Below, in pieces: positions 1 through 34,611 of a stretch of 64,000 nucleotides of DNA; the first letter of the stretch is position 1; each line of letters opens with the position of its first letter. The notes beneath the pieces were generated by a model. The model was not told where the DNA came from and made no database searches. It saw only the letters and a list, made by a program, of their open reading frames with translations. A program made the position numbers and the translations under genes. The DNA comes from Macrostomum lignano (lineage: Eukaryota). The DNA lies in the NCBI GenBank assembly GCA_002269645.1, contig NIVC01001190.1, forward strand, positions 1 to 64,000. The letters run 5' to 3'.

Positions 1-1110
1 CAAGAACTAACCCAAATAGTGTAGATGGTTCTTCATTCGTTTTATCTTGCGATTCATCACCGTCTTTGCGTCCCCTTCGTTGGCTGCTTGATTGCTTCCG
101 TCATCAGGAGTAACAGTAGCGCTGCAACAGGAACTCGCGCCGCGAATCCAGCGAACGCAGCTGGATTCTCCAAAACTTTCCTCTCGCTGTCACTTTCCTC
201 CTCGCTGTCACTTTCCGTGCTGCTACTTTCCCCCACGCTATCACTTTTCTTGCTGCTACTTTCCTTGTTGACGCTTTCCTGGTAGTCGGTTACCTGGTTC
301 TTAACCTTCATTTTTTCACATTTCTCTGCGTTTTCTTCGCTGCTGTCTGAGTCGCACGAGTAATCTGTCGAAATATTTTTCTCTTCTGGGCGGTTTAAGT
401 TGACGGCGGCAAAATGGAACACGGTATCGCCATCGCAGTTTGTTCTGTAAAAGTATTTGGGTTTCTGCACCATCTTAATAATCTCTTTCAGAGATTCTTT
501 TGAGAAGCAACTCATACAGTAATGCAGAGGCGTTGTCGGTGGCTGTCTTTTTTCAGCATGCAGTTTTTTTTATGCTTGAAGTGTTCTATAATTTTTAAAA
601 GCGTCTTTTCGCCCTCTGAAGTCATTGCGGCGTAGTGCGCTGCAGTTCTCTTGCATCCTTCTTCTGTATCGTCTTTCACCAGTTTTTTCGGTCGAAAATT
701 TTTATTTCGCTTTAAGAGATTCCGGGCCTTCTGGAATTTTTTTGCTTTTGTAAACTGAAGAAGTTCCAAATATGGGTCTTTTCGGTCTTCTGTGTTTTCT
801 GGGTCTTCAGACTCTTCTGAGTCTTCTGGGTCTTGAGGGTCTTCTGTGTCTTTTTCTTTGTTTGCAGACATTTGAAAGTCTGAATTCTCAACCGAACATT
901 TTTCGAATTCAGAGATTGTTTGCTAGCTGTATTCCTCGCGTCGGGAAGTCCTGGTGGCAGGGTATCCCCGTCGGTCTCGTCACAAGAGCTGCTGTCATAG
1001 TAGACCGCGTGCTTTCCTTGAACACTCACGCTCGACTCCGGCTGCTGCATTATCCAACCAGCTGAGTCGCACTCGCGCTGGGCTTCCGCTTCTGTGATGG
1101 GTTTTTGCAT
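1..1110 (-). pseudogene. Frameshifted N-terminal part of an ankyrin-repeat protein, paralogue of the TRP-like gene at 5249-9548; runs off the window start
   Basis: ORFs 712..1110, 512..871 and 57..515 join via frameshifts into KRTAAHYAAM...CMLKKDSHR/TPLHYC...GDTVFHFAAVN, collinear with GRTAAHFAAM...CLDMEDEHKATPLHYA...GNTLAHCAARN of the 1197-aa ORF. One base appears missing near 533. Could be a pseudogene or assembly indels. Confidence 0.7.
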
Positions 1111-4617: not shown

Positions 4618-5240
4618 CTCCGCATAGATACTCTCAATAGATAATCTCCTCTGAATAGATAATCTCTTATGAATAGATAATCTTCTCTGAATAGATAATA
4701 TCCTCTGAATAGATAATCTCCTCTGAATAGATAATCTCCTCTGAATAGATATTCTCCTCTGAATAGATATTCTCCTCTGAATAGATAATCTTCTATGCAG
4801 GGATAAAAATAATTGCTTGTTTCTCCATATAGACAGAGGGATAATCTACTCTCATGGATATGGATAGATCTCCTCTCATGAATATCGACGATGTCCTCTC
4901 ATCGATCTGGATAATCTTCTTTCATATTTAGAGATAATCTCCTTACATGGGTTGGATAATCTCCTCTCCTAGATTGAGTAATCTACTCTACATGGATGTG
5001 GATAATCTCACATGATCTCAAATGGATTTTCATTCTCATTATTAGTCTCATCCCATGGATATAGATAATCTCAACTCAAAGATATTGATAATCTCCTCTT
5101 TTAGACATTGACAATCTTCCCTACATCTATATGAACAATCTTCTCTACGTGGATGTGGATAATTTGTTCTACTTAGGTCTCTCTTTGTACATGGACATTG
5201 AAAATCTCCTGTCATGGACGTTAATAATCTTTTCCACATA
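4618..5240. repeat. 18-bp tandem repeat (AATAGATAATCTCCTCTG) grading into a degenerate ~21-bp repeat
   Basis: About 9 near-perfect units at 4635-4795, then recurring GATAATCTCCTCT...CATGGA motifs up to ~5240. Confidence 0.8.
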
Positions 5241-5248
5241 GATTCGCT

Positions 5249-5515
5249 TCAACCCCTTTTCTTCCTTGCAGTCTGAGTAGCGACAGGCAGCCAGCTTTTT
5301 GGTTTCTGAGCATTATTGTATCGTCGATTTTCTTGCGGCATTCTGGAAGTCTGACCGCTTGTCATCGGCAATGCCGGCTGGAATGCCGAGCGCCAACGCG
5401 GCTGATGCTCCAAGAGACTGCCCAGCTGGTAGCGCAGGTGGCGGAGCTGGTTGGCTTGGAAGCCAAGATAACGCAGGTACTCCAGCGGGTACTGATGCTC
5501 ATTGTTCCACCAGCC
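5249..5515 (-). CDS. Putative terminal exon of the ankyrin/TRP-like channel (GWWNNEHQYPLEYLRYLG...ARKKRG*)
   Basis: Acceptor ccctcgctag| at 5516 gives a phase-0, 88-codon open frame ending in TGA at 5249-5251, matching the phase-0 donor GAG|gtacgt at 6015/6014. Hand-inferred; no transcript evidence. Confidence 0.5.
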   Translation of the reverse strand, partial: GWWNNEHQYPLEYLRYLGFQANQLRHLRYQLGSLLEHQPRWRSAFQPALPMTSGQTSRMPQENRRYNNAQKPKSWLPVATQTARKKRG

Positions 5516-6014
5516 CTAGCGAGGGGTTTATATTGCGAGTGAGTTACATGACGAATGTGAGGCTTTGATAATACGCCAAGGTAAATCATTTTCGTTAGTT
5601 CTATCGATTTACGTGTGTTTCGTGCATCTGGATTGCAATGATGCACATTGTAATACGAGCATAGGATTATAATAATTGCGTCACTTACTTTTCATTGTCT
5701 GTTGCAGTGTAGAATATACGCACATAGCTGCAGAACTGAGTGCATACTTACGTCTTGCAACCGCGAATACATGTAGAAATTAAGTCCAAGGGAAAGTGGA
5801 AGGTGGGAAAAATTCCTAAACGAACAAACCATACATTATATTTTAGGATCAGTGTCGTTAGTACACTGATTTTTAACTGCAGGCACTCATTTTGGCGTCC
5901 AAAAAGCAAAACTGATTACTATCTTTGTCCGCCACATATAGCTTTACTGGGAGGACAATATTTCTACTGTCTTTTCCCGTGGTGACTACAATAAACAACA
6001 ACAAACAGACGTAC

Positions 6015-9000
6015 CTCATTGTCACAATCAACTTTCAACCGTCTGAAGCAGCCACAAGACCAGCAGGTAAAGAGCGCCACTCGTCTCTGATGCTCACGCA
6101 GCAGCTCAAAATACGACCGCCTCCACAGCCCGACCGCTTTGTCACGCATTTCATTGACGCGGCTACTGAACCTGGCAATGAGCAGGTACAGCATCACGAT
6201 GTTTACCAGGCTGAGAAAGACAAACACGAGTAGATTTTGAAACCAGGAGAGCCCGATCGCGTTGGCAACTGATCCTACAGACTGGTCGAGGCCGCTACGC
6301 GGTGTGTCGAAGTTGATCTGGTCAAATTTTGTAAACAGCAGGTCAAGTGGCAGGGTGAATATCTGTAGAATCACTCGCCACCAGTAGGTGTTCGCACTGA
6401 GCTCACTCTGCACTGACGTAGTCACAGGAAACAACAAGTTGAAGTAGAAAACTCCGAATGAGTAAAAAATAATTCCAACGATGCTTAGAAAAGGCAGAAA
6501 GTCTTTCAGAACAACGCACTTCATCATAGCGATCATGGGTCCTACTGTCGATGAAAAGTTCAAGAAAGCAATTAGCCGAAGTCCAAACAACAGACATGAG
6601 GCCGACATTGTGGCTTGACAAGCGTACACGGTGATATCAGTGGGCCTGAGAAAGATGCACCACTTCCAAATTATTCCCAACCAGAGTAGAATAAGAGCAC
6701 ACCAGTCTATCAAGTTAGAGAAGTCTCTGCAGTACGGCGGACAGCTTCCAAGTCTTCTTGGTCTGGCGCTGGTCCCGCATCTGCGGCAGGTGTGAGGCAT
6801 CAAAGCCATGACAACATCGATCACTTGTAGAATTAGGAAGAACGAAGCAAAGGCTGTTAAAATCGCGTCAATTGTCCATGAGTTAAAAGTCCGCGCAAAG
6901 TCAATTGTGTACCACGAAAAGTAAAGTAGGAACACTGCATGGACGGCTAGACGCGCATAAAACAACATTGCAAGTCCGAAGCTATAAATCCAGGAGCTGG
7001 AACTTGTTCCTTGGCCTCGCCTTTCATAACACGAAGATCGCCATTCATCATTGGCCATCCTATGAAGACAATCTGTTGCTAGGAGCTCGTCGCAGTCGGC
7101 CTCCTCAATCAGATCCATGATGGTGACACTCGTAGCCGTGTGGTAAATTTCACAAGTACTACAGTTCGCTCCAGGAAAACGAGGCCCACCAGCTTGAGCT
7201 TGGTCGTCACAAATGTTGCCCCGGATGTACCGGAATAGCATCTGTTTCTCGCTCCAGCTAGCATTTTCAAACAGATGGTTGACGACAACGACGAGAACTC
7301 TTATTACTCTTTTATATAGGTTTTCGAGTTGCTCATATCCGCTGCAAGTCTCACCCCGCTGATTTTGCAGCTGTATGATCAGACGCAGGCATGCAGGAAT
7401 CAGGTCAAACTGTCTCGTGATGACAAGATCTGGTAGAAGCTCGAACTTGCCAGCTTTCAGGGCGATATCAACTATTTGAAGCTCCGACTGCGAATTTGTT
7501 TGCTGACAGCCTGGAAGCAGATTTGATCGACTTTGCTCAACCAGATAGTCGAGGAACTTTGTTTCCGCGTCTGGACTAATAAGATTTAGTCTGAGTGCAC
7601 TTCTGAAAGCCACAGAAGAGTCTAGGTACCAAGCTTGGCGAAATGCGTCTGCAAAAAGCATCTGTTGTTTTGATACCACAAGAGGCTGCTGCTCCAGAGT
7701 GGAAACCGTTGATCCATTGTCTGCCACAGACAGCACATGACATGCGCTGTCATAGTCAGGTAGCTCTAGCGACCATCGGATTGGGTCAATAAAACGAAGC
7801 GCGTCAACTACGCGGATTTCGAGAGCCTCTAAAAGGCTTTCTAGCTTGCCGGCTTCAACTGCATAGTCAATGCAAGTGAGCCCTGCGCTGTCTAAATCTG
7901 TAAGTCTTAGCCGCTTCTTCAAAAGAAAGTCAATGTTGTTCTTGTGAGCAGCTTGACAAGCAAAGTGTAGGCAGGTGGCGCCGAGTCTGGGGCCTTTCAG
8001 GACCTGCTCTCTTACAAGTTTGTACGACTTTGTGTTCAACTGGGTCTTAAATACGTTAACAATGTTCTCTAGAGAATACCTGCCAGAGTAGAAATGAAGA
8101 ATATGAAAACCTGACGAGTTGTAAGCGTTCAAGTTTAGTGACACTTTGACATGCTTTGAAGCCGATGATAGCACGGCTTTAAGAACGTCTTCATTCAGGC
8201 GACTGCACTGAAGCCAGTTTTGTCCCAGAATGTTCTCAGCTCTCTGATCGATGCCAAAGTTGTTGATCAGCTTTTGGACAGCGGCATTGAAATTCTTGAT
8301 TGACTCGCTATTTCCACTGCCGAGCATGACAGCATGAAGTAGGCTGTTTCCTTCCAAGTCACAAATTCGAAAGTCCTTCTTAGGTGCATCAGTAGCGAGA
8401 AGAAACTCGAAATTCCAGCCCATACATGCGTAAAACAGCATGTTCCTGCCGAATCGGTCCTGCTTGCTTGAGTACCAGTTGATGTCGCTTGTTTCTTTGA
8501 GAAAGTCCATAACGCCTTTGTCCTGCGCAGCAAAATGTATCGGTGTCTGGCCGTCGTTATTGGCATCTTCTGCTATTTTCTCAGCGAAATTTTCAACTGG
8601 CGTCATGACCATCCGTCTGGTAATTTTCATGAAAGTCCTGGGCTTCCCATACAGCCCAGTGTAATGCAGAACCGTGTTACCGGACTTATCGGGTCTAAAC
8701 AGTTCCAGTGAGACTATGTCAGCCATTTGTTCTGCTGCGCTGTCAGGCAGGTATTTAATGATAGCCTGCATCACTGACTGGCCGTTGGCATTCTTCCAAT
8801 TCAAGCACTTTTGTCCCCAACATGCCAGAGCCACTGAATTGAGAAAGCTGTCATGCTGTTTCCCTGAATATGCATCCAAATGAACGTGCTGGTTCCTAGC
8901 TGCATAGTGAGCGAGAGTGTCGCCCTCGTCATCAACCAGATTTTTAGGAGCACCGAGTTCATCAGATTCCAATGCATGATTTAGAAAAGTCTTGGCGGTC

Positions 9001-9548
9001 TCTACACTGCAGTGCTCCATGGCTATGTGAAGCACGGTCTGTTTTTTGCTATTCTTCCACAACACAAATCCTCTTGTGACAGGCCAGTTGGTCCGCTGGT
9101 TGCCGTCTGATGCTCGTAAAATTTCTAGAATGACCTCCTCGTGGCTGCAGTTCCGAGCGGCACAATGGGCCAGTGTGTTTCCGTATTTGTCTCTGAGCCG
9201 GTAGCTGCATAAAAAACGAAGCACGTTCGGCCAGAGTTGCTTGAGTTGCTCGAGCGAGTAGCTTGCGGTGGCGTAATGAAGCGGAGTTGCTTTGTGTTCA
9301 TCTTCCATGTCAAGACAAGAAAGTCCTGCACTGCGAGACAGTTCCTCGAGCAAACGGAAGCCTCCTGGTTCCATGGCGGCAAAGTGAGCCGCAGTTCGAC
9401 CCTCATCGTCTCTTTCCAAACTGAAGGCCTGCTGAATGTGCTTGATGGAAACTTCGAAATTGCCTCGTTTGGCTTCAACAAGCAGGCTTCCTCTGATCTC
9501 CTCATTCTGTAACTGTGCTGCTGCAGGCGGACCGACTGCAGTCGTCAT
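6015..9548 (-). CDS. Ankyrin-repeat TRP-like cation channel (multiple ankyrin repeats plus a 6-TM module with TRPM-like S3-S6/TRP box), main exon
   Basis: 1197-aa ORF (first ATG at 9548). Repeated GxTxxHxAA/TPLHY ankyrin motifs over ~600 aa; S3 RDFSNLIDWCAL; S4-S5 LFGLRLIAFLNFSSTVGPMIAMMKCVVLKDFLPF; S6 NIVMLYLLIARF; TRP-box-like LWRRSYFELLREH. Likely donor at 6014. Confidence 0.85.
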
Positions 9549-9785
9549 ATTGATCAAATGGTACTCAGGACAATGCAGTTGTAGAACCAGCGCAGCCTGC
9601 GATTCAAGTGATGTTTTTATTCCGTGAGTAAATCAGAGTGGCTTAGGAATCGCACTTGGTAAAAATGCACGCACAAGGTACATAATCTACTGAAACGGTA
9701 TTTACAAAACTCGTGCTTTCAGTAGCGAACTTTTAAAACATTGGCAGCTAAACTACCGTGGCTTACGCAGAGTAAGGGGCACCAC

Positions 9786-12550
9786 GGCCCACTAAGAGAC
9801 AGGGGCGCCCACTATTAAGAGACAGGGGGACCCACTATTAAGAGACAGGAGTGCCCATGCACCAAGGGACAGGGGCGCCCACTATTAAGAGACAGGGGCA
9901 CCCACTAAGAGACAGGGGCGGCCACTAAGAGACGGGGGCGGCCACTAAGAGACAGGGGCGGCCACTAAGAGACAGGGGCGGCCACTAAGAGACAGAGGGA
10001 CCCACTATTAAGAGACAGGGGGACCCACTATTAAGTGACAAGGGGACCCACTATTAAGAGACAGGGGGACCCACTATTAAGAGACAGCGGCGGCCACCAA
10101 GAGACAGGGGCGGCCACCAAGAGACAGGGGCGGCCACTAAGAGACGGGGGCGCCCACCAAGAGACAGGGGCGGCCACCAAGAGACAGGGGCGGCCACTAA
10201 GAGACAGGGGCGGCCACTAAGAGACAGGGGCGGCCACTAAGAGACAGGGGCGGCCACTAAGAGACAGGGGCGCCCACTAAGAGACAGGGGCGCCCACTAA
10301 GAGACAGGGGACCCACTATTAAGAGACAGGGGCAGCCACTATTAAGAGACAGGGGGACCCACTATTAAGAGACAGGGGGGCCCACTATTAAGAGACAGGG
10401 GCAGCCACTATTAAGAGACAGGGGCAGCCACTATTAAGAGACAGGGGGGCCCACTATTAAGAGACAGGAGTGCCCATGCACCAAGGGACAGGGGCGCCCA
10501 CTAAGAGACAGGGGCGCCCACCAAGAGACAGGGGCGGCCACTAAGAGACAGGGGCGCCCACCAAGAGACAGGGGCGCCCACTAAGAGACAGGGGGACCCA
10601 CTATTAAGAGACAGGGGCAGCCACTATTAAGAGACAGGGGGGCCCACTATTAAGAGACAGGGGGACCCACTATTAAGAGACAGGGGCAGCCACTATTAAG
10701 AGACAGGGGGGCCCACTATTAAGAGACAGGAGTGCCCATGCACCAAGGGACAGGGGCGCCCACTAAGAGACAGGGGCGCCCACCAAGAGACAGGGGCGGC
10801 CACTAAGAGACAGGGGCGCCCACTAAGAGACAGGGGCGGCCACTAAGAGACAGGGGCGCCCACTAAGAGACAGGGGCGCCCACTAAGAGACAGCGGCGCC
10901 CACTAATAGACAGGGGCGCCCACTAAGAGACAGGGGCGCCCACTAAGAGACAGGGGCGGCCACTGAGAGACAGAGGGACCCACTATTAAGAGACAGGGGG
11001 ACCCACTATTAAGTGACAAGGGGACCCACTATTAAGAGACAGGGGACCCACTATTAAGAGACAGCGGCGGCCACCAAGAGACAGCGGCGGCCACCAAGAG
11101 ACAGGGGCGGCCACTAAGAGACAGGGGCGCCCACTAAGAGGCAGGGGCGCCCACTAAGAGACAGGGGCGGCCACCAAGAGACAGGGGCGGCCACCAAGAG
11201 ACAGGGGCGGCCACTAAGAGACAGGGGCGCCCACTAAGAGACAGGGGCGGCCACTAAGAGACAGGGGCGGCCACTAAGAGACAGGGGCGCCCACCAAGAG
11301 ACAGGGGCGGCCACTAAGAGACAGGGGCGCCCACCAAGAGACAGGGGCGCCCACTAAGAGACAGGGGGACCCACTATTAAGAGACAGGGGCAGCCACTAT
11401 TAAGAGACAGGGGGGCCCACTATTAAGAGACAGGGGGACCCACTATTAAGAGACAGGGGCAGCCACTATTAAGAGACAGGGGGGCCCACTATTAAGAGAC
11501 AGGAGTGCCCATGCACCAAGGGACAGGGGCGCCCACTAAGAGACAGGGGCGCCCACCAAGAGACAGGGGCGGCCACTAAGAGACAGGGGCGCCCACTAAG
11601 AGACAGGGGCGGCCACTAAGAGACAGGGGCGCCCACTAAGAGACAGGGGCGCCCACTAAGAGACAGCGGCGCCCACTAATAGACAGGGGCGCCCACTAAG
11701 AGACAGGGGCGCCCACTAAGAGACAGGGGCGGCCACTGAGAGACAGAGGGACCCACTATTAAGAGACAGGGGGACCCACTATTAAGTGACAAGGGGACCC
11801 ACTATTAAGAGACAGGGGGACCCACTATTAAGAGACAGCGGCGGCCACCAAGAGACAGCGGCGGCCACCAAGAGACAGGGGCGGCCACTAAGAGACAGGG
11901 GCGCCCACTAAGAGGCAGGGGCGCCCACTAAGAGACAGGGGCGGCCACCAAGAGACAGGGGCGGCCACCAAGAGACAGGGGCGGCCACTAAGAGACAGGG
12001 GCGCCCACTAAGAGACAGGGGCGGCCACTAAGAGACAGGGGCGGCCACTAAGAGACAGGGGCGCCCACTAAGAGACAGGGGCGCCCACTAAGAGATAGGG
12101 GCGCCCACTAAGAGACAGGGGCGGCCACCAAGAGACAGGGGCGGCCACTAAGAGACAGGGGCGGCCACCAAGAGACAAGGGCGGCCACCAAGAGACAGGG
12201 GCGGCCACTAAGAGACAGGGGCGCCCACTAAGAGACAGGGGCGCCCACTAAGAGACAGGGGGACCCACTATTAAGAGACAGGGGGACCCACTATTAAGAG
12301 ACAGGGGGACCCACTATTAAGAGACAGGGGGACCCACTATTAAGAGACAGGGGGACCCACTATTAAGAGACAGGGGGACTCACTATTAAGAGACAGGGGG
12401 ACCCACTATTAAGAGACAGGGGGACCCACTATTAAGAGACAGGGGGACCCACTATTAAGAGACAGGAGTGCCCATGCACCAACAAGGGACAGGGGCGCCC
12501 ACCAACAGACAGCAGGGCGCCCACCAACAGACAGCAGGGCGCCCACCAAG
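9786..12550. repeat. 2.8-kb minisatellite of 20/23-bp units (CCACTA[TTA]AGAGACAGGGGCG[G/C]) with a 773-bp higher-order duplication
   Basis: Direct reading; variant markers recur at a 773-bp offset (10731/11504, 10901/11674, 11011/11784). Confidence 0.95.
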
Positions 12551-13243
12551 ACACCAAGCATTCGAATTGTGAGTTTTGTGTTTGCTGTTCTGGGGTTGGC
12601 CTGCGCTGGGGGGTTGGGCACGCTTTTATTTACCTGCGTCAATATCGATTACATACATGTACATGAATACTTCGTGCGTGACAAATATATATATCGACTA
12701 AATTTGGCCTTTGAGTGTGTATTTCTCTCGCAATTCTGGTCTTACAGAATGTTGGCGCCCCTTTATGCATGAGGCCCTTACATAAAAATTCCTGAGTATG
12801 CCCCTGCAAAAGCAAGGTCCGAAGTATTTTTGCCGATTAACTTACCACACGAGAAGTACCAAAGAGTCTAGCTATACAAATAATTCGCCAAACCAATGTT
12901 TTTGATAAACGCTTAAAGTTGGTTTAAATTTATCAGCTTAAACGAGAAAATATTGCCCTTAAGCCTGGCTTGTATCCATTTTATACTTCTGTTCGTCCTA
13001 CTGACATGCAAGCCCTGCTAAATTAGGCACGCATTGCAGGTACCCCAGTGTGAGTTGCCAAGATAGTTCAGTAAATCTGTCAAGTGTCACGTTTTACTGA
13101 ACTGAGTGGGTAAAACACGTACAGTTCCTGATAGATGGAACTAGAGAAAATACAAATGTCTGGGTGTCACACTACTACCGTATTATTGCACACTTTGAGT
13201 TCATATACTTAAAATACCCTAACCCTGCAGTGACGTCGATGTC

Positions 13244-17110: not shown

Positions 17111-19480
17111 AGACCCACGACCCACCTCCATGAGGTGTCTCTGGATCATTCTAAAGGACCGTACAACCACCGAGTCTGCGAGGAAGCTGGAAATAACGCG
17201 TCACCTGACAGCGCCACCGACAACCTTCGAACCGTCATGCGCCTCCGCGGAGGAAACGACGACGCCCAAAAAGCGCATCGCTGCCGGAGTCGTGGGAGGC
17301 GCCGAGAAGCCACAGCATCGCACAGAGCCGAGCTGGGCCCAGAACTCCTGGTGCAGTTTAACTGCAACGGCATTAAAAGCCGCCAAATGGAGATACCTCA
17401 CAGGTTCACTCTCCTAACGCCCTGCCGTGGCCCTCCTTCAGGAAACAAAGCTAAGGCATAACGAAGAGTACAATCCACCAAGAGGGTATGTAAAAGCTGC
17501 CAGAGCGGACGGCGCCGCCCTGGACAGGCCTAAAACCGGCGCTAACGTCACTGACACTGCCGACCAGCCTACTCCACCTCTGCCCGATCCCCCCGCTGGC
17601 ACTGCCGGGAAACTGCGCCGCGTCAAGAACCCACGCTGCCGCCTCAGATACCCCGGCCTCCGTGCGGAATGGTGCCCCGGATGCCGCAGCGGCCGCACCG
17701 CATGCAGCGTCCGTTTCACGCCATGAACCAACTCCCACCAGCCGGCCCAACCCGGAGCGAGCCCTACCAGCACGGCGCCTGCTAGTCAGCCCCAACCAAT
17801 CCAAAAAACCGAAAAAAAGAATCACGGGGCGTGGCGGTGCATTGGTACTCGTTCGGGAAGACGTCCAATACGATAGGTTATCGATCAACCGCGAGCAAGA
17901 ACTCCTGGATGTCGTCGCCTGCCGCATCCGCCTACAAGGACAACAGCCAACTGTGGTGGCCTCCATTTACGCCCCACCCACCAGTTACCAACGCCCTGAC
18001 GATACCTGGCAGCCAACCTTTAACAATCTACCGGTCACCGGAAGAGCCATCCTCGGGGGTGATTTCAACGCCCACGGCAGCTGGAAACATCACCTCGACG
18101 AGGACGCCAGGAGCCAAACGGTTGATGAATGGGTTGCTCGCAACTGTCTGACCATCTGCAACTCAACCAACCACACGAGAGCGTGCCCCAGCACAGGTCG
18201 CATCAGCAGTCCGGATGTGACGATCTGCAGCAGCGCCCTCTCCGGCGTTTTGACCGACTCCTGGAGAATAGGCCCCGACTGGAGAACAACCTGCCAGGGA
18301 CAGAAACACTGGATCTACAAAAAAGCAAACTGGGCCGTCTTCCGGGATATTTTGACTGGCTGGGTCGACTCCGATCTACAAACGGTCGCGCTTAACGATG
18401 AGGCTACTCGGCTCTCCGAGGCTATACTCTCAGCCGCGCGACACAGCATCCCGCGCAGCTCAGTAAAGCCAATGCGCCAGTTCCCTTTCTGGAACGACGC
18501 ATGCGAGGATGCCACGAAAGCGACCAAAGCCGCTTGCCAGGCCGTCGAAGCAGATCCGACCCCGGAGAATCTTGCCGCAGCCGCTCGGGCCCGACATAAT
18601 GCCTCAGACTGCCTCAACAAGGAAAAGAAAGCCTTCCTGCTGGAAAGGGCGGCGCACTTCCACCAAGGCCCCGACATCTTTGGCCTACCCTGCGCCATGA
18701 GAGGCGAAGGGCACAAGACTGCGGACCCCGCAGCGATTACTAGAGCCGCCTGATTTAGACTTGAAGGTCATTGAGTCAGACCTCTGAAAATGCCCCGAGC
18801 GTACGGCCCGCACTAACAAGGAAAAGGCAGAGCTTTTCTGCCAGATGTACGCGGAAGTGAGCCGAGTCCCCAGACGCCGCCAGGACACCGCAATCCGCTA
18901 CGAAGCCAACGAGGCCACGACAGTCACAGACGAACCCCCGCTCACGGCCCGGATGCCCTCTTCTCTATCGACGAGCTCCGCGCAGCCGTTCGTCGCCTCA
19001 AGTCAGGAAAGTCTGTGGGGGCCGACGGCGTCTCAAACAAGATTCTGAAACGCCTCCCCGCGGCCGATGAGAATATTCTCCTCAAACTCATCAACCGCAC
19101 CTGGACCGAAGGGCAAACACCGACCAGCTGGCGAAATGGCATCATCATCCCGATCCGAAAAAAGACAAGAGTGCTACGTCGCCGTCCGGTCGCTTTGACC
19201 AGCTGTGTCGCTAAGTGCGCAGAGTGCATGGTGCTTGCCCGCCTTACTTGCAACGGCCCGCTCCCTGGCTACCTGCTCCGAGGAGCTCCAACCTGCTCTG
19301 GACGCAGTGACCAGCTGGTGCAGGACCTGGAAGGTCACCACTAGCAACAGCAAATGCTGCTATACCACTTTCACTCTGGCCCCAAATGAGAACAACGGAA
19401 AGAGCCAGGTGAACCTTTGCATTAATGGAGATAAACTCAATTTTGAGCTCACGCCGACATTTTTGGGGCTCACGTTGGAC
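17111..19480 (+). mobile_element. Decayed LINE ORF2: APE endonuclease plus internally deleted reverse transcriptase
   Basis: APE motifs QFNCNG, LQETK, SIYAPP, GGDFNAH, SSPDVT; RT motifs KSVGADG, WRNGIIIPIRKK, RPVALTSCVAK, LQPALDAVTSWC, FLGLTLD; multiple frameshifts and stops. Confidence 0.9.
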
Positions 19481-19696
19481 GGCGCCAGCTACAGAGGGGG
19501 CGCCAGCTACAGAGGGAGGCGCCAGCTACAGAGAGGGCACCAGCTACAGAGGGGGCGCCATCAACAGAGGGAGCGCCAGCTACAGAGGGGGCGCCAGCTA
19601 CAGAGGGAGCGCCAGCTACAGAGGGAGGCGCCAGCTACAGAGAGGGCACCAGCTACAGAGGGGGCGCCAGCTACAGAGGGGGGCGCCATCTACAGA

Positions 19697-20247
19697 TGCG
19701 CGCCAAGCCGTTTGAAGGCGTGCCTCCAGCGCCTCAGAGACCACGGGATCACCCTTAACCCCGATAAGTGCCGTCTCGCCCAACCTTCCATCGAATTTCT
19801 CGGAATGCGCATCAGCGCCAGCGGCGTCCAGCCAACAGAGGAGAAAATAAAGGCGCTCAAGGCCTTCAAGGAGCCCACGAACACATCGGAGCTACGCTCA
19901 TTCCTTGAGCTGGCAACCTACCTGTCAAGGTTCATTCCTTCAGTACTTCGATGACTGTCATTCGAGCTTTTATCCCCTCTTTGTTTCTTTCTGCTTTGGG
20001 AGAAGTGTTATTGCCACCTAGTTGAATTAGCCTAGCAGGGCGGTGCCTGTTGCCAGCGCTCTCTCTCTCTCTCGCCCGCTATGTCCTAATCAATAGCATC
20101 AATAGCGTAGCAATGTACATGTTCATGAATGTACGCATCGTTCACTGTCGCCTAACAAATGTATATATATTGGGCCCACGGCCATATGGGGCCTTAAGTC
20201 TTTCGTTTCGCGCTGACACTGCCGCCTTCACTATCGCAGTCTTTACA
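19697..20247 (+). mobile_element. Ty3/Gypsy remnant copy 1: RT C-terminal fragment, polypurine tract, 242-bp LTR (20006-20247)
   Basis: LQRLRDHGITLNPDKC...EFLGMRIS...LRSFLELATYLSRFIP is the Gypsy RT end; GGGAGAAG immediately precedes TGTTA...TTTACA (TG...CA LTR ends). Confidence 0.8.
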
Positions 20248-20577
20248 GAGGGGGCGCCAGCTACAGAGGGGGCGCCAGCTACAGAGGGGGGCGCCAGCTA
20301 CAGAGGGAGCGCCAGCTACAGAGGGAGCGCCAGCTACAGAGGGGGCGCCAGCTACAGAGGGGGCGCCAGCTACAGAGGGGGCGCCAGCTACAGAGGGAGG
20401 CGCCAGCTACAGAGAGGGCACCAGCTACAGAGGGGGCGCCATCAACAGAGGGAGCGCCAGCTACAGAGGGGGCGCCAGCTACAGAGGGAGCGCCAGCTAC
20501 AGAGGGAGGCGCCAGCTACAGAGAGGGCACCAGCTACAGAGGGGGCGCCAGCTACAGAGGGGGGCGCCATCTACAGA

Positions 20578-21128
20578 TGCGCGCCAAGCCGTTTGAAGGC
20601 GTGCCTCCAGCGCCTCAGAGACCACGGGATCACCCTTAACCCCGATAAGTGCCGTCTCGCCCAACCTTCCATCGAATTTCTCGGAATGCGCATCAGCGCC
20701 AGCGGCGTCCAGCCAACAGAGGAGAAAATAAAGGCGCTCAAGGCCTTCAAGGAGCCCACGAACACATCGGAGCTACGCTCATTCCTTGAGCTGGCAACCT
20801 ACCTGTCAAGGTTCATTCCTTCAGTACTTCGATGACTGTCATTCGAGCTTTTATCCCCTCTTTGTTTCTTTCTGCTTTGGGAGAAGTGTTATTGCCACCT
20901 AGTTGAATTAGCCTAGCAGGGCGGTGCCTGTTGCCAGCGCTCTCTCTCTCTCTCGCCCGCTATGTCCTAATCAATAGCATCAATAGCGTAGCAATGTACA
21001 TGTTCATGAATGTACGCATCGTTCACTGTCGCCTAACAAATGTATATATATTGGGCCCACGGCCATATGGGGCCTTAAGTCTTTCGTTTCGCGCTGACAC
21101 TGCCGCCTTCACTATCGCAGTCTTTACA
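20578..21128 (+). mobile_element. Ty3/Gypsy remnant copy 2 (LTR 20887-21128)
   Basis: Appears identical to 19697-20247 at +881 bp. Confidence 0.8.
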
Positions 21129-32192: not shown

Positions 32193-34611
32193 TCACTCAG
32201 CAGCAGCAGCGGAAACCTCAGCTTCCACAGCTTCATCATCAGGTTTCTGGCCGCCAACGCCGAGGCACTCCGACAGCAGGTTGATCATCTCGCTAGACTT
32301 CAAGGAGGTTCCGCCCGATGGCGCGGAGCCGGCGGTCGCGGCAACTGCAGTGGTGGCGCTCGCAGTTGAAGCCGTCTCGGCATCCGCCGCGGCAGTGGCG
32401 GCATCGTCGGGCTCCTCAGCGGCGGAGGTCAGGCCGCTGCGCCGGCGTTTCTTGATCGGCGAGGCGACCAGCGGCTCGCGCTTCACCGCCGCTGCTGCCC
32501 GCCTGCGCTTCCGGCCGCCGCCGCCGCCGCCGTCTCCGTTGGCGTCGCCGCCGACTTCGGCATCGCCGGCGTCCTCTTCCAGGTCAGCCGCTTCGCTGCC
32601 GTTGCCGCTCACGCTGCCGGCTTTGCCGCTCCCGCCGCCGCCGCCGCCGCCTAGAGCAGCGTCATCCGACACGACGTCCTTCTCTAGCCGGAGCTTCTCG
32701 CAGGCGATCCGATGCACGCCGACTTCAACGGAGTCCGCCGACAGCAGGCGGATGACTCGAACTGGGCGCTCCTGGCCAAGTCGGTGGCAGCGGTCCTCCG
32801 CCTGCTTGTCGTTGTACGGATTGAAGTCAATGTCGTGGATGATGACGGTGTCGGCTGCCGTGAGGTTGATGCCTGCATCGGGGGCGAGGGGCGCATTAAT
32901 CATATCACGATTTTCAGGCATGCCAACAGACGCGCCCACCTGTGTGCCCTGCAGACAAGCGCTTCTCTCCAACACTGTCCCCACCCACGTAAAATTGCAC
33001 GCGCTGGCAGTATGAAAAGTGCAAAAGTGCACAGACAGACAGAGAGACACGAGTGCCGAGACAGAACAGCGAAGCAAAATCAAACACCACAGCCTTACGG
33101 TCGGTTCTTTTACAGAAATATTAGTTGGCGCAGAAATGGCCAGACAGACCCCGAACTGAACTGGAATGACTTTTTGGCCTGGGTTCGCTGTGACCTCTAT
33201 TTGGAACTGAAATGCGCAGAACCGCATCAGTTCAGACTGACGAGATGCGAGCGCTATGGGCTGCCAATTCTGCTATCGTATGAAGGTTATGAAAATATGG
33301 ATAGACTAGTCAGCAGTCAGCTAAACTTTTAGCTCCTAACGTGTTGCCTAACCATATTCTGTAGCTTTTCTGACGTCAGGAATATTCGTTTTTTAAGCCA
33401 CAGACGGCCCTATACTGGAGCCATAGACTACTATCTTATACTGAAGCCATAGACTACTTATCCTATACTGAAGCCATAGACTACTTATCCTATACTGAAG
33501 CCATAGACTACTTATTCTTTACTAAAGCAGACTACTACCCAATACTGAAGCCATAAACTACCCTATACTGAAGACATAGACTACTTATCCTATACTGAAG
33601 CCATAGACTACTTATCCTATACTGAAGCCATAGACTACTTATCCTATACTGAAGCCATAGACTACTTATCCTATACTGAAGACATAGACTACTTATCCTA
33701 TACTGAAGACATAGACTACTTATCCTATACTGAAGCCATAGACTACTTATCCTATACTGAAGCCATAGACTACCCTATACTGAAGACATAGACTACTTAT
33801 CCTATACTGAAGCCATAGACTACTTATCCTATACTGAAGCCATAGACTACTTATCCTATACTGAAGCCATAGACTACTTATCCTATACTGAAGCCATAGA
33901 CTACCCTATACTAAAGCCATAAGCTACCCTATACTAAAGCCATAGACTACCCTATACTGAAGCTGTAGACTACTCTATAGTAAAGATATCTTTCTAACCT
34001 CTAATGAAATATAATTCTATACATTTTGGCTAATAAACAAGTCACCTTGCGCAGACCAACTGGCAACGCGCTAAAATATTTTTCCTAATTTGGTACTGGA
34101 TTTTGGGGCCACTTCCTGTGCAATTCTTCTATTCAGGCCTCAGAGAAGAAGGCAAACACATCCGGGGCAGTTAAGATTGATGGCGGCGGGTTTTGGCAGT
34201 AAATATACTAAGTAAGCTATTTTGCAATAAACCAAGGAGAAGCAGAGCATACCCGACAATCCGAGGGCTCTCAATTAATTAATTAATCTTCATCTGTTCA
34301 TTTTACGCTCAGATTAACTTTGATTAATAATCAAACCGGACTAAAGGGCGTCAGAGACTACTGAGCTACGGCTCCTGCGGTAAAGGCAAGCAGGATCACA
34401 GACAAGGGCATGGAGAGGGGTAGACAAAGACAACCAGACAAAAATACAGACACTCAGACAGGTGCACATACTCAGAAAGACAAGTACACATACTCAGAAA
34501 GACAGGTACACATACTCAGACAGACAGATACAGACACTCAGACAGACAGACACAGACACTCACACAGACAGATACAGACACTTGGACAGACAGACAGACA
34601 GACCGACGGAG

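What the first reader, a model, noticed from the sequence alone, without database searches (positions are those of the whole stretch)
5249..9548. Ankyrin-rich channel with a TRPM-like transmembrane module and a rewritten pore and gate
Seen: ~600 aa of ankyrin repeats, a linker containing CxxCxxxH (CSTCEIYH), then six TM segments. Established: canonical TRPM channels use MHR domains rather than ankyrin arrays, which belong to TRPA/N/C/V. By eye, this S1-S6 resembles TRPM (pre-S1 TIMDLI...W; S1 AVFLLYFSWYTIDF; S5-pore SFGV...NLLFP...IFTLPLDLLF; TRP box). However, the filter FG[EQ] reads FTKF and the S6 gate NLLIAMF reads YLLIARF, placing an Arg at the gate position. Inference: an undescribed chimeric or early-branching TRP subfamily (compare TRPS), possibly with altered ion selectivity or a non-conducting sensor/scaffold role.
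Basis: partly seen in the sequence, partly recalled or inferred. Interest (0 to 1): 0.75.

Follow-up and report, generated by a model that had tools for sequence, protein, structure and literature searches.

The report
Divergent flatworm ankyrin-TRPM-like channel gene
This is a real, intact gene of the free-living flatworm Macrostomum lignano for an ion-channel subunit that joins a long ankyrin-repeat arm to a TRPM-type membrane core; this build is already known from the parasite drug target TRPM_MCLZ, but this copy has changed several residues that almost all relatives keep in the pore, the gate and a likely calcium site.

Summary
On the minus strand, a two-exon gene (9548-6015 and 5515-5249) encodes 1266 aa: about 15 ankyrin repeats, a helical linker, six TM segments and a TRP helix. 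It is Macrostomum lignano Mlig030667, annotated only as hypothetical.

- **Family.** By sequence profile and by predicted fold the membrane core is TRPM-type, not TRPA, TRPN or TRPC. There is no SLOG/MHR1-2 domain.
- **Already described.** This architecture is known in parasitic flatworms as TRPM_MCLZ, the 'TRPM-like' clade. The 'undescribed or early-branching subfamily' reading is therefore only partly right.
- **New here, as far as my searches show.** The gene sits in a large, very divergent Macrostomum expansion: 29 clusters at 50% identity, and every member I looked up is M. lignano.
- **Unique residues.** The S6 fingerprint Asn is Tyr (N in 111 of 112 relatives). The S2 Glu, at the position of the TRPM Ca2+-site Glu, is Gln. 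The filter position is Lys. The post-TRP LPPP motif and the C-terminal conserved segment are missing.
- **The 'gate Arg'.** It lies two residues after the retained gate Ile and recurs in paralogs.
- **Selection.** A second 99% copy gives dN/dS 0.29 (p = 8e-4), so the gene is constrained.
- **Likely role.** A channel subunit with altered gating or permeation, perhaps working with canonical paralogs. Function is untested.

The parts
6015..9548 (-). Exon 1, codons 1-1178: ANK array, linker, S1-S6 and TRP helix
   Evidence: ORF; splice donor GAG|gtacgt at 6015/6014; tblastn of the spliced protein is 100% over 9548-6015.
5516..6014 (-). Intron, 499 nt, GT...AG
   Evidence: The intron is also present in the second genomic copy L001, with 6 differences in 499 nt.
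5249..5515 (-). Exon 2, codons 1179-1266 plus stop: GWWNNEHQYPLEYLRYLGFQANQLR... tail
   Evidence: Matches annotated models P0001 and P0002. The motif WW..YP.EY..FL.FQA.QFR is conserved in paralogs. Similarity ends near 5420. The paralogs' 'NR.D.D.LKAH.EN' segment and the long C-terminal region after it are absent in all three frames.
7809..9491 (-). Ankyrin-repeat solenoid, aa ~20-580, about 15 repeats
   Evidence: Pfam Ank_2, Ank_4, Ank, Ank_3 and Ank_5. AF2 pLDDT 83. Foldseek top hits are ankyrin-1, ankyrin-B, NOMPC and TRPA1.
6984..7808 (-). Helical linker, aa 581-855: degenerate MHR4-like region plus pre-S1 (TIMDLIEEADCDELLATDCLHRMANDEW at 7041-7124). It contains the non-conserved CSTCEIYH at 7140-7163.
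   Evidence: hhalign of the group-A linker against the linker of the Ank+MHR3/4 flatworm proteins: prob 95.5, E 1.4e-8. That linker against TRPM MHR3/4: prob 99.7, E 3.7e-25. Foldseek alignments to TRPM structures span about 600-690 columns, so they include the linker. CxxCxxxH is not conserved.
6549..6980 (-). S1-S4 voltage-sensor-like domain, aa 857-1000. Residues at the TRPM Ca2+-site positions are Q908 and D911 in S2 and N945 and D948 in S3. S4 Arg is R991.
   Evidence: Hydropathy. Profile alignment to drTRPM2. Column counts: S2 Glu is E in 16/16 paralogs and Q only here; N and D in S3 are invariant.
6168..6503 (-). Pore domain: S5 (aa 1016-1040), pore helix (~1053-1070), filter F1072-T-K1074-F-D1076 and S6 (1100-1127) with Y1121-L-L-I1124-A-R1126-F
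   Evidence: Y1121 replaces an Asn found in 27/27 group-A and 84/85 other relatives. K1074 is unique. R1126 is shared with 5 paralog clusters.
6081..6140 (-). TRP helix, aa 1137-1156, KAVGLWRRSYFELLREHQRR, with W1142. The following LPPP motif of TRPMs and of the paralogs is replaced by VALFTCWSCG.
   Evidence: Alignment to TRPM2 'iWkfqryelikeyhsrpalpppf'; paralog sequences.

Best explanation
The locus is Macrostomum lignano gene Mlig030667. It has two exons and encodes one subunit of a tetrameric TRPM-like cation channel of the flatworm type exemplified by TRPM_MCLZ.

**Architecture.**
- The SLOG/MHR1-2 head of canonical TRPMs is replaced by an ankyrin solenoid, here about 15 repeats.
- A degenerate MHR4-like helical linker follows, then a TRPM-type S1-S4 domain, pore, S6 and TRP helix.

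**Family position.** The gene belongs to a large and very divergent expansion. Every member I looked up is from M. lignano.

**What sets this copy apart.** It has replaced residues its relatives almost never change:
- the S6 fingerprint Asn (Y1121)
- the S2 Glu at the TRPM Ca2+-site position (Q908)
- the filter side chain (K1074)

It has also lost the post-TRP LPPP motif and the conserved C-terminal segment. It keeps the gate Ile, the S3 Asn/Asp pair, the S4 Arg and the TRP Trp, and it evolves under purifying selection.

**Inferred mechanism (not shown).**
- It still folds and assembles as a channel subunit.
- Gating and permeation are altered: reduced or re-tuned Ca2+ dependence, and a less hydrated, less cation-friendly pore.
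- It probably works as a specialised or modulatory subunit, possibly co-assembling with canonical paralogs such as Mlig015722, rather than as a standard homomeric cation channel.
- The ankyrin arm would serve as the cytoplasmic docking or regulatory module.
For: **Shown: identity and gene model**
- Intact spliced CDS of 1266 codons.
- 99-100% identity to M. lignano proteins.

**Shown: TRPM-type core**
- Single-sequence PDB hits for the TM region are TRPM2, TRPM4 and TRPM5 at 1e-8 to 1e-5. The NompC TM region scores only 9.9 bits.
- With a family profile, the top 60 PDB sequences are all TRPM1-8, at 1e-33 to 1e-17.
- The Foldseek top 50 are all TRPM.
- There is no SLOG domain.
- The ANK solenoid is confidently modelled.

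**Shown: link to the TRPM_MCLZ type**
- The linker connects transitively to TRPM MHR3/4 through the Ank+MHR3/4 flatworm proteins.
- In an NJ tree of the TM region, all ANK-bearing proteins fall on one side of a 91%-supported split from the SLOG-bearing TRPMs. The focal protein is sister to P0021 at 100%.
- The parasite clade in that tree carries six published TRPM_MCLZ pocket residues at a constant offset.
- TRPM_MCLZ has this architecture, is a functional channel and has few exons (PMC11731825; PMC12861061).

**Shown: unique residues and constraint**
- dN/dS is 0.29 against the second genomic copy, with 15 synonymous and 15 nonsynonymous differences and binomial p = 8e-4. Both copies are intact.

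**Background for the inference**
- N-L-I-A-W is part of the group-I TRP fingerprint, with Asn at 93.7% (PMC9242649).
- The S6 Asn is proposed to rotate into the pore and hydrate it on opening. In NaChBac, only Asp substitutes for it functionally (PMC6219692).
Against: **No functional data**
- I could not reach any expression or electrophysiology data. All functional statements are inference from residues.
- Three changes at near-invariant sites plus the lost C-terminal segment could equally mean loss of channel function.

**Limits of the selection test**
- dN/dS rests on only 30 differences between two very young copies.
- It does not test the older branch on which the unusual residues arose.

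**Limits of the tree**
- It is neighbour-joining, has no non-TRPM outgroup, and uses only the 120 best relatives. The position relative to the TRPM alpha, TRPM beta and TRPS groups is unresolved.

**Limits of the models**
- The AF2 TM model is a monomer of modest confidence (pLDDT 64). It cannot show whether Y1121 or R1126 faces the pore.

**Heteromerisation**
- Co-assembly with paralogs is speculation.
Confidence: 0.55

Rival explanations
1. It is an independent, early-branching TRP subfamily. On this view an ankyrin-bearing lineage predates the loss of ankyrin repeats in the TRPM/TRPS ancestor, and this protein is a relic of it.
For: - Himmel et al. infer that ankyrin repeats were lost before the TRPM-TRPS split (PMC7306681), so an ANK-bearing sister lineage is conceivable.
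- ANK-bearing proteins separate from all SLOG-bearing TRPMs in the NJ tree at 91%.
- Rohr et al. place TRPM_MCLZ 'next to' rather than inside the other flatworm TRPMs.
Against: - Every named ANK-bearing relative among the 120 best of 1.84 billion representatives is a flatworm. An ancient lineage should survive elsewhere too.
- The less divergent members still carry a TRPM MHR3/4 region (PF25508; hhalign E 3.7e-25). That points to a swap of the head domain within a TRPM.
- The SLOG side of the split already includes a choanoflagellate-type TRPM2 chanzyme relative. Rooting on it would make the ANK clade a long branch inside the metazoan TRPM radiation.
- My tree has no outgroup.
Confidence: 0.1
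2. It is a paralog on its way to becoming a pseudogene. In a family of dozens of copies, this one has lost pore, gate and Ca2+-site residues and its C-terminal segment, and it no longer makes a working protein.
For: - It has unique substitutions at three near-invariant functional positions.
- It has lost LPPP and the C-terminal 'LKAH..EN' segment.
- A large, redundant family makes loss of one copy cheap.
- The genomic neighbourhood is rich in repeats and retrotransposons.
Against: - Both genomic copies keep the 1266-codon frame and the splice sites.
- dN/dS is 0.29, with significantly fewer nonsynonymous changes than neutral expectation (p = 8e-4).
- The TM branch is only modestly longer than that of its sister paralog, 0.37 against 0.27.
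- The gate Ile, Ala and Phe, the S3 N..D pair, the S4 Arg and the TRP Trp are all kept.
Confidence: 0.15
3. It is a homomeric channel with switched selectivity. The positive charges in the filter (K1074) and in lower S6 (R1126) would make the pore anion-permeable, or at least Ca2+-impermeable.
For: - A single Lys in S6 of TRPM8 (V976K) turns it into an anion channel (Kuhn et al. 2007, as summarised in PMC9805079).
- K1074 is unique at the filter position, where relatives carry E, D, Q or N.
- R or K at the S6 +2 position recurs in six other representatives (five R, one K), so it is tolerated and may be functional.
Against: - R1126 is not at the V976-equivalent position. That position is I1124, which is retained.
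- Acidic D1076 follows the filter.
- Replacing the S6 Asn with a bulky Tyr argues for poorer conduction, not a new selectivity.
- There is no tetramer model and no recording.
Confidence: 0.1
4. It is a non-conducting scaffold or sensor. The ankyrin arm and the S1-S4 domain would be used for binding or signalling while the pore is permanently shut.
For: - It has a long, well-folded ANK solenoid.
- It has lost the pore-hydrating Asn.
- Non-conducting TRPM8 V976 variants still signal metabotropically.
Against: - Purifying selection acts on the whole protein, with too few changes to single out domains.
- The pore-lining fingerprint L-I-A-F and the pore-helix aromatics remain conserved. That is hard to explain if the pore were unused.
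Confidence: 0.1

Closest known systems
TRPM_MCLZ (Schistosoma mansoni Smp_333650) and its orthologs: the flatworm 'TRPM-like' clade (Park et al. 2024; Sprague et al. 2024; Rohr et al. 2026)
   Same: - N-terminal ankyrin repeats in place of the SLOG/MHR1-2 head.
- TRPM-type S1-S6 and TRP helix.
- Few exons: 3 in S. mansoni, 2 here.
- Restricted to flatworms.
- Falls on the same side of the split from SLOG-bearing TRPMs in my tree.
   Different: - It is not an ortholog. The TM region scores only about 45-90 bits (about 26% identity) against the parasite proteins, compared with 110-485 bits within its own Macrostomum clade.
- The ANK array is much longer, with hits over aa 20-580 against roughly 100-350 in the parasite proteins.
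- No MHR3 (PF25508) is detectable.
- The second S1 His of the meclonazepam pocket is absent (by eye, from the sequences).
- The unique residues Q908, K1074 and Y1121 are found only here.
Canonical TRPM channels (TRPM2, TRPM4, TRPM5, TRPM8, TRPM3, TRPM7)
   Same: - Pre-S1 motif, S1-S4 with residues at the E/N/D Ca2+-site positions, S5-pore-S6 and the TRP helix.
- Same fold for linker plus TMD.
- The paralogs even keep the post-TRP LPPP motif.
   Different: - No SLOG/MHR1-2 and no Nudix or kinase domain.
- Ankyrin array instead.
- The filter reads FTK instead of FG(E/Q).
- S6 reads YLLIARF instead of NLLIA(M/L)F.
- The conserved C-terminal segment is absent.
TRPN (NOMPC) and TRPA1
   Same: A long N-terminal ankyrin solenoid in front of a six-TM TRP core. 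The ANK model matches the NOMPC and TRPA1 arms structurally.
   Different: The TM region is not of their type. The NompC TM region scores 9.9 bits against 34.7 for TRPM2. TRPA1 matches only in the repeats. No TRPA, TRPN or TRPC entry appears among the top 60 profile hits or the top 50 fold hits.
TRPS (soromelastatin, ced-11-like)
   Same: A divergent relative of TRPM, recognised mainly by its TM-region phylogeny.
   Different: TRPS carries SLOG and Nudix domains and has no ankyrin repeats (PMC7306681). This protein is the reverse.
TRPW of choanoflagellates (bioRxiv 2026.06.15.732245)
   Same: Another case in which a TRP membrane core related to TRPM has taken on a different repeat-type cytoplasmic head (WD40), with lineage-specific expansion.
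   Different: A different head domain and a different lineage. No sequence comparison was made here.

Membership tests
Group-I TRP channels (fingerprint of Cabezas-Bratesco et al. 2022) | S6 and TRP-helix fingerprint residues N-L-I-A ... W (Asn676, Leu678, Ile679, Ala680, Trp697 in rTRPV1) | tested here: inconclusive
   L, I, A and W are present (L1123, I1124, A1125, W1142). The Asn is replaced by Y1121, uniquely among 112 aligned relatives. Four of these five residues are met. The other seven fingerprint positions were not mapped.
TRPM (canonical melastatin family) | N-terminal SLOG/MHR1-2 (LSDAT_euk) domain | tested here: not met
   No Pfam hit other than Ank families at E <= 1. No phmmer hit with TRPM N-termini as query, although 28 of the other hits matched.
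TRPM (canonical melastatin family) | MHR3/MHR4 region between the head and S1 | tested here: inconclusive
   The direct profile-profile comparison is not significant. There is a transitive link through the Ank+PF25508 flatworm proteins: A to B at E 1.4e-8 over 132 columns, and B to TRPM at E 3.7e-25. Foldseek aligns the linker to TRPM structures. Only an MHR4-like part is supported.
TRPM (canonical melastatin family) | S1-S6 plus TRP helix most similar to TRPM among TRP families | tested here: met
   All top sequence and fold hits are TRPM1-8. The NompC TM region scores 9.9 bits.
TRPM (canonical melastatin family) | Conserved C-terminal segment after the TRP domain (a coiled coil in TRPMs) | tested here: not met
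   The paralogs carry 'NR.D.D.LKAH.EN' followed by a long C-terminal region. The focal exon 2 ends before it, and no remnant exists in any frame downstream. No coiled-coil predictor was run.
Flatworm 'TRPM-like' clade (TRPM_MCLZ type) | Ankyrin repeats at the N-terminus in place of SLOG, joined to a TRPM-type channel core | tested here: met
   The definition is taken from PMC11731825 and PMC12861061.
Flatworm 'TRPM-like' clade (TRPM_MCLZ type) | Groups with TRPM_MCLZ orthologs rather than with SLOG-bearing TRPMs in a TM-region tree | tested here: met
   In an NJ tree with 100 bootstraps, a 91% split separates all ANK-bearing proteins from the SLOG-bearing TRPMs. The parasite clade is identified as TRPM_MCLZ by six pocket residues at a constant +18 offset in P0070. 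Caveats: NJ only, no outgroup, and Smp_333650 itself was not available.
Flatworm 'TRPM-like' clade (TRPM_MCLZ type) | One-to-one orthology with TRPM_MCLZ and a conserved meclonazepam pocket (H827, H831, Y864, E868, R943, Y1117) | tested here: not met
   The focal protein lies in a separate clade with 100% support, together with M. lignano paralogs only. Reading the focal sequence against P0070 by eye, the first S1 His, the S4 Arg and a TRP Tyr are present, but the second S1 His is not. The S2 Glu is Gln. Drug response cannot be tested here.
TRPA / TRPN / TRPC / TRPV | TM region groups with that family | tested here: not met
   Only the ankyrin repeats match TRPA1 and NompC. None of these families appears among the top profile or fold hits.
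TRPS | SLOG and Nudix domains, no ankyrin repeats | tested here: not met
   No SLOG or Nudix hit; about 15 ankyrin repeats. The definition is from PMC7306681.

The most novel reading that the evidence does not exclude
A naturally evolved TRPM-like subunit whose pore has been rewritten: filter Lys, S6 Tyr in place of the near-universal Asn, and S6 Arg. It would either conduct anions or conduct nothing. In the second case it would act as a 'silent' modulatory subunit that tunes heteromeric channels formed with canonical paralogs, within a large expansion of the TRPM_MCLZ drug-target family in a free-living flatworm.
Probability: 0.15. Interest if true: 0.7.

Novelty: new variant of a known kind. 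Interest (0 to 1): 0.45.

Why it matters
**Relevance to drug-target work.** TRPM_MCLZ-type channels are validated anthelmintic targets. So far they have been discussed only for parasitic flatworms.

**What this gene adds**
- The ankyrin-for-SLOG design also exists in a free-living flatworm that can be studied in the laboratory, where it has expanded into dozens of divergent genes.
- That gives a natural series of sequence variants for asking what the ankyrin head does.
- It also allows a test of how much change the TRP pore fingerprint tolerates.

**Why this copy in particular.** It is a natural experiment. It replaces the S6 Asn, which is conserved in about 94% of group-I TRPs, and still stays under selection.
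- If it conducts, it challenges the idea that this Asn is needed for pore hydration.
- If it does not, it may be a first candidate for a 'silent' TRP subunit.

Nothing here is established beyond sequence and predicted structure.

Tried and rejected
**Searches that gave little**
- The second and third word-indexed homolog searches (linker+TM alone, then a 10-sequence profile) returned only 1 and 2 proteins. They gave no named outgroups and no deeper alignment.
- An exact look-up of the window's unspliced product found nothing on record. I therefore obtained no transcript-derived contigs and no direct evidence of expression.
- No TRPA, TRPN, TRPC, TRPV, TRPS or Smp_333650 sequences could be fetched, so the requested multi-family ML tree was not possible. 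No ML tree program was available either. I used NJ with Kimura distances plus ranked PDB profile and fold hits instead.
- The supplementary FASTA file of Rohr et al. 2026 is not held.

**Ideas rejected**
- The CxxCxxxH motif as a zinc site: it is not conserved.
- 'Arg at the gate': the gate Ile is kept, and Arg or Lys recurs in paralogs.
- A missed 3' exon encoding the conserved C-terminal segment: tblastn and three-frame translation downstream found none.
- Direct homology of the linker to TRPM MHR3/4: not significant on its own, with hhalign probability 1%.

**Literature.** The TRPM evolution papers I checked do not mention ankyrin-bearing TRPMs. The two Marchant-lab papers do.

Full report
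**1. The observation**

The minus strand carries one uninterrupted ORF of 1197 codons at 5964-9557.
- Reading the DNA shows a consensus donor directly after codon 1178 (GAG|gtacgt, exon 1 ends at 6015).
- A 499-nt intron ends in AG, and a second exon runs 5515-5249.
- The spliced CDS is 3801 nt and encodes 1266 aa.

This is the model that NCBI annotates for a 99%-identical copy, 'hypothetical protein BOX15_Mlig030667g2' of Macrostomum lignano (P0001). A UniRef entry (P0002) is 100% identical over the parts it contains. The window is therefore flatworm nuclear DNA, and the finding's coordinates are exactly the gene.

- Pfam sees only ankyrin families, over roughly aa 20-580.
- AlphaFold2 on aa 1-620, with 13 paralogs as alignment, gives a confident model (pLDDT 83, pTM 0.75). 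It consists of about 15 helix-pair repeats. Its best structural matches are the 24-repeat ankyrins, NOMPC and a 17-repeat TRPA1.
- Six hydrophobic segments follow a helical linker of about 275 aa.

**2. The membrane core**

With the single sequence, the TM region hits zebrafish TRPM2 (2e-8), TRPM4 and TRPM5. NompC and TRPA1 match only through their ankyrin repeats. The NompC TM segment scores 9.9 bits against 34.7 bits for TRPM2.

A profile built from the focal protein and nine paralogs (A2) gives 60 top PDB sequences that are all TRPM1-8.
- E-values run from 1e-33 to 1e-17.
- The alignment runs from pre-S1 through S6 and the TRP helix, into the LPPP motif.

An AF2 model of aa 587-1178 is of modest confidence (pLDDT 64, and 70-90 in most TM helices). 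Its 50 best Foldseek matches are all TRPM structures, with 600-690 aligned columns, so the linker is included.

**3. Relatives**

An exhaustive HMMER scan of 1.84 billion cluster representatives, using linker plus TM as query, found 120 proteins at E <= 1e-3.

- *Close group.* Twenty-nine representatives score 110-485 bits. Every one I looked up is an uncharacterised M. lignano protein. I call this group A. All eleven distinct full-length lineages in my tree carry ankyrin repeats wherever the N-terminus is present.
- *After a score gap.* Ankyrin-bearing flatworm proteins are interleaved with true TRPMs. They include several M. lignano groups with the Pfam architecture Ank + PF25508 'TRPM2-like domain' + Ion_trans. 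They also include proteins of about 1320-1410 aa from Opisthorchis, Dicrocoelium and Schistocephalus.
- *Taxonomy.* No named ankyrin-bearing hit comes from outside Platyhelminthes.

Local profile-profile comparison ties the linkers together:

| Comparison | hhalign probability | E-value | Columns |
|---|---|---|---|
| Ank+PF25508 proteins vs TRPM MHR3/4 | 99.7% | 3.7e-25 | 259 |
| Group A linker vs Ank+PF25508 linker | 95.5% | 1.4e-8 | 132 |
| Group A linker vs TRPM directly | 1% | not significant | - |

The focal linker is therefore best read as a strongly diverged MHR4-like plus pre-S1 region.

I built a neighbour-joining tree of the TM region: 65 sequences, 284 columns, 100 bootstraps.
- All SLOG-bearing proteins fall on one side of a 91% split, and all ankyrin-bearing proteins fall on the other.
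- Group A is a 100% clade. The focal protein is sister to P0021 (Mlig015722) at 100%.
- The SLOG side includes a close relative of the choanoflagellate TRPM2 chanzyme and invertebrate TRPM2-like proteins.
- The tree has no non-TRPM outgroup, because I could not fetch one.

**4. The architecture is already known**

Sprague et al. (Front Parasitol 2024, PMC11731825) describe schistosome TRPM_MCLZ (Smp_333650, 1380 aa, three exons).
- It lacks the MHR1/2 or SLOG domain and instead carries ankyrin-repeat modules at the N-terminus.
- It is the channel activated by meclonazepam.

Rohr et al. (2026, PMC12861061) state that it clusters next to the other TRPMs and could be called 'TRPM-like' because of its N-terminal ankyrin repeats. 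They report it in all parasitic flatworms and analyse 63 orthologs.

The Dicrocoelium protein P0070 (1378 aa) carries six of the published pocket residues at a constant offset of +18: H827, H831, Y864, E868, R943 and the F/H/Y site 946. The parasite clade in my tree is therefore TRPM_MCLZ.

Neither paper mentions free-living flatworms. The TRPM-evolution papers I checked say that TRPM and TRPS lack ankyrin repeats. Within the library searched, the Macrostomum expansion appears unreported.

**5. What is special about this copy**

I aligned all relatives to a TM profile and counted residues at key columns.

| Position in focal | Relatives in group A | Other relatives |
|---|---|---|
| Y1121 (S6 fingerprint Asn) | N in 27/27 | N in 84/85 |
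| Q908 (S2 Glu, TRPM Ca2+-site position) | E in 16/16 | E in 46/51 |
| K1074 (filter, F-[G/T]-x) | N, L, I, M, T or Y | E, D, Q, N or I |
| R1126 (two after the gate Ile) | L in 21, R in 5, K in 1 | M, L, V, T or I |

- Tyr at 1121 occurs only in the focal protein and its near-identical copies.
- The S3 Asn and Asp partners of the Ca2+-site positions (N945, D948) are invariant.
- Arg at 1126 is a recurrent family variant, not a peculiarity of this gene.
- The gate Ile (I1124), A1125, F1127, the S4 Arg and the TRP Trp are all kept.

The paralogs keep the TRPM post-TRP motif LPPP(L/F)S, whereas the focal protein reads VALFTCWSCG. The paralogs continue after the conserved 'WW..YP.EY..FL.FQA.QFR' stretch with 'NR.D.D.LKAH.EN' and a long C-terminal region. 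The focal exon 2 diverges there and ends, and no remnant exists downstream in any frame.

The CxxCxxxH motif lies in a variable-length loop after a conserved GP(K/R)FP and is not conserved.

**6. Is the gene alive?**

A second genomic copy (L001, GCA_002269645.1 contig NIVC01001580.1) is collinear with the window for at least 12 kb.
- Across the CDS there are 15 synonymous and 15 nonsynonymous differences and no indels.
- The intron differs at 6 of 499 positions.
- Nei-Gojobori counting gives pS 0.0176, pN 0.0051 and omega 0.29.
- The shortfall of nonsynonymous changes is significant (binomial p = 8e-4).

The protein has therefore been under purifying selection since the two copies separated, after the unusual residues had already appeared. 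This does not test the older branch. I could not obtain transcript evidence.

The UniRef model P0002 starts in the 5' leader without a Met. It also uses an in-frame internal GT...AG (6646-6966) that removes S1-S3. This may reflect a real transcript isoform or a prediction artefact.

**7. Mechanism**

Shown: the fold and family of each module, the residue states and the selective constraint.

Background from the literature:
- The N-L-I-A-W residues are part of the group-I TRP fingerprint and form the lower-gate patch, with Asn at 93.7% (PMC9242649).
- The S6 Asn is proposed to swing into the pore on opening and hydrate it. In the related NaChBac channel, only Asp can replace it with function retained (PMC6219692).
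- A Lys at the gate position of TRPM8 (V976K) makes an anion channel, and V976D is non-conducting (PMC9805079).

Inferred: with Tyr for Asn, Lys in the filter, Gln at the S2 Ca2+-site position and no conserved C-terminal segment, the homotetramer, if it forms, should gate and conduct differently from its paralogs. Because the gene is constrained and sits in a family of canonical siblings, I favour a specialised or modulatory channel subunit.

Decay, switched selectivity and a pure scaffold role are listed as rivals. My confidence that this is a TRPM-like, TRPM_MCLZ-type ankyrin channel gene is about 0.9. My confidence in the functional reading is much lower, and the overall figure of 0.55 reflects both.

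**8. Verdict**

- Novelty: a new variant of a known kind.
- Interest is moderate. The link to an anthelmintic target family and the natural replacement of a near-universal gate residue make it worth a bench test. It is not a new class of channel.

Noticed in passing
window 9787-12551: A 20-bp minisatellite of about 131 copies (consensus GCCCACTAAGAGACAGGGGC, 83% matches). It begins only about 240 bp upstream of the gene's ATG. It accounts for the GC-rich, strongly AT-skewed block seen in the composition profile, and it is also present at the second genomic copy L001. Whether it affects the promoter is unknown.
   Followed up: partly
window 6646-6966 (minus strand): The UniRef model P0002 removes aa 862-968 (S1-S3) in frame. 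The boundaries fit an internal GT...AG with a pyrimidine tract (AT|GTTGTT ... TCTTTCTCAG|G). This could be a real alternative isoform lacking most of the S1-S4 domain, or a gene-prediction artefact.
   Followed up: partly
window 17662-20835 (+): Three separate ORFs hit endonuclease-reverse transcriptase and RVT_1 domains. This looks like a degraded non-LTR (LINE-like) retrotransposon in a GC-rich block.
   Followed up: no
window 32193-33227 (-): An ORF of 344 aa has a Helicase_C hit. It is probably one exon of an unrelated helicase gene.
   Followed up: no
window 384-685 (-); L001 18960-21365: There is weak ankyrin similarity at the very start of the window. It lines up with a neighbouring 802-aa ankyrin-repeat gene called about 4.7 kb downstream in the second copy L001. 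The neighbouring gene is therefore another ankyrin protein. I did not check whether it is a family member.
   Followed up: no
protein clusters P0024, P0025, P0028, P0043, P0044 and P0059 (M. lignano, not in the window): Five group-A representatives share the S6 motif NIARF, with Arg two residues after the gate Ile, and P0059 has NIAKF. All keep the canonical Asn. A basic residue at this position is therefore a recurrent feature within the Macrostomum expansion and deserves its own look.
   Followed up: partly
window 4700-4800 (minus-strand reading): Translation downstream of the gene shows a short tandem repeat (RRLSIQRRISIQ... in one frame), another simple repeat flanking the gene.
   Followed up: no
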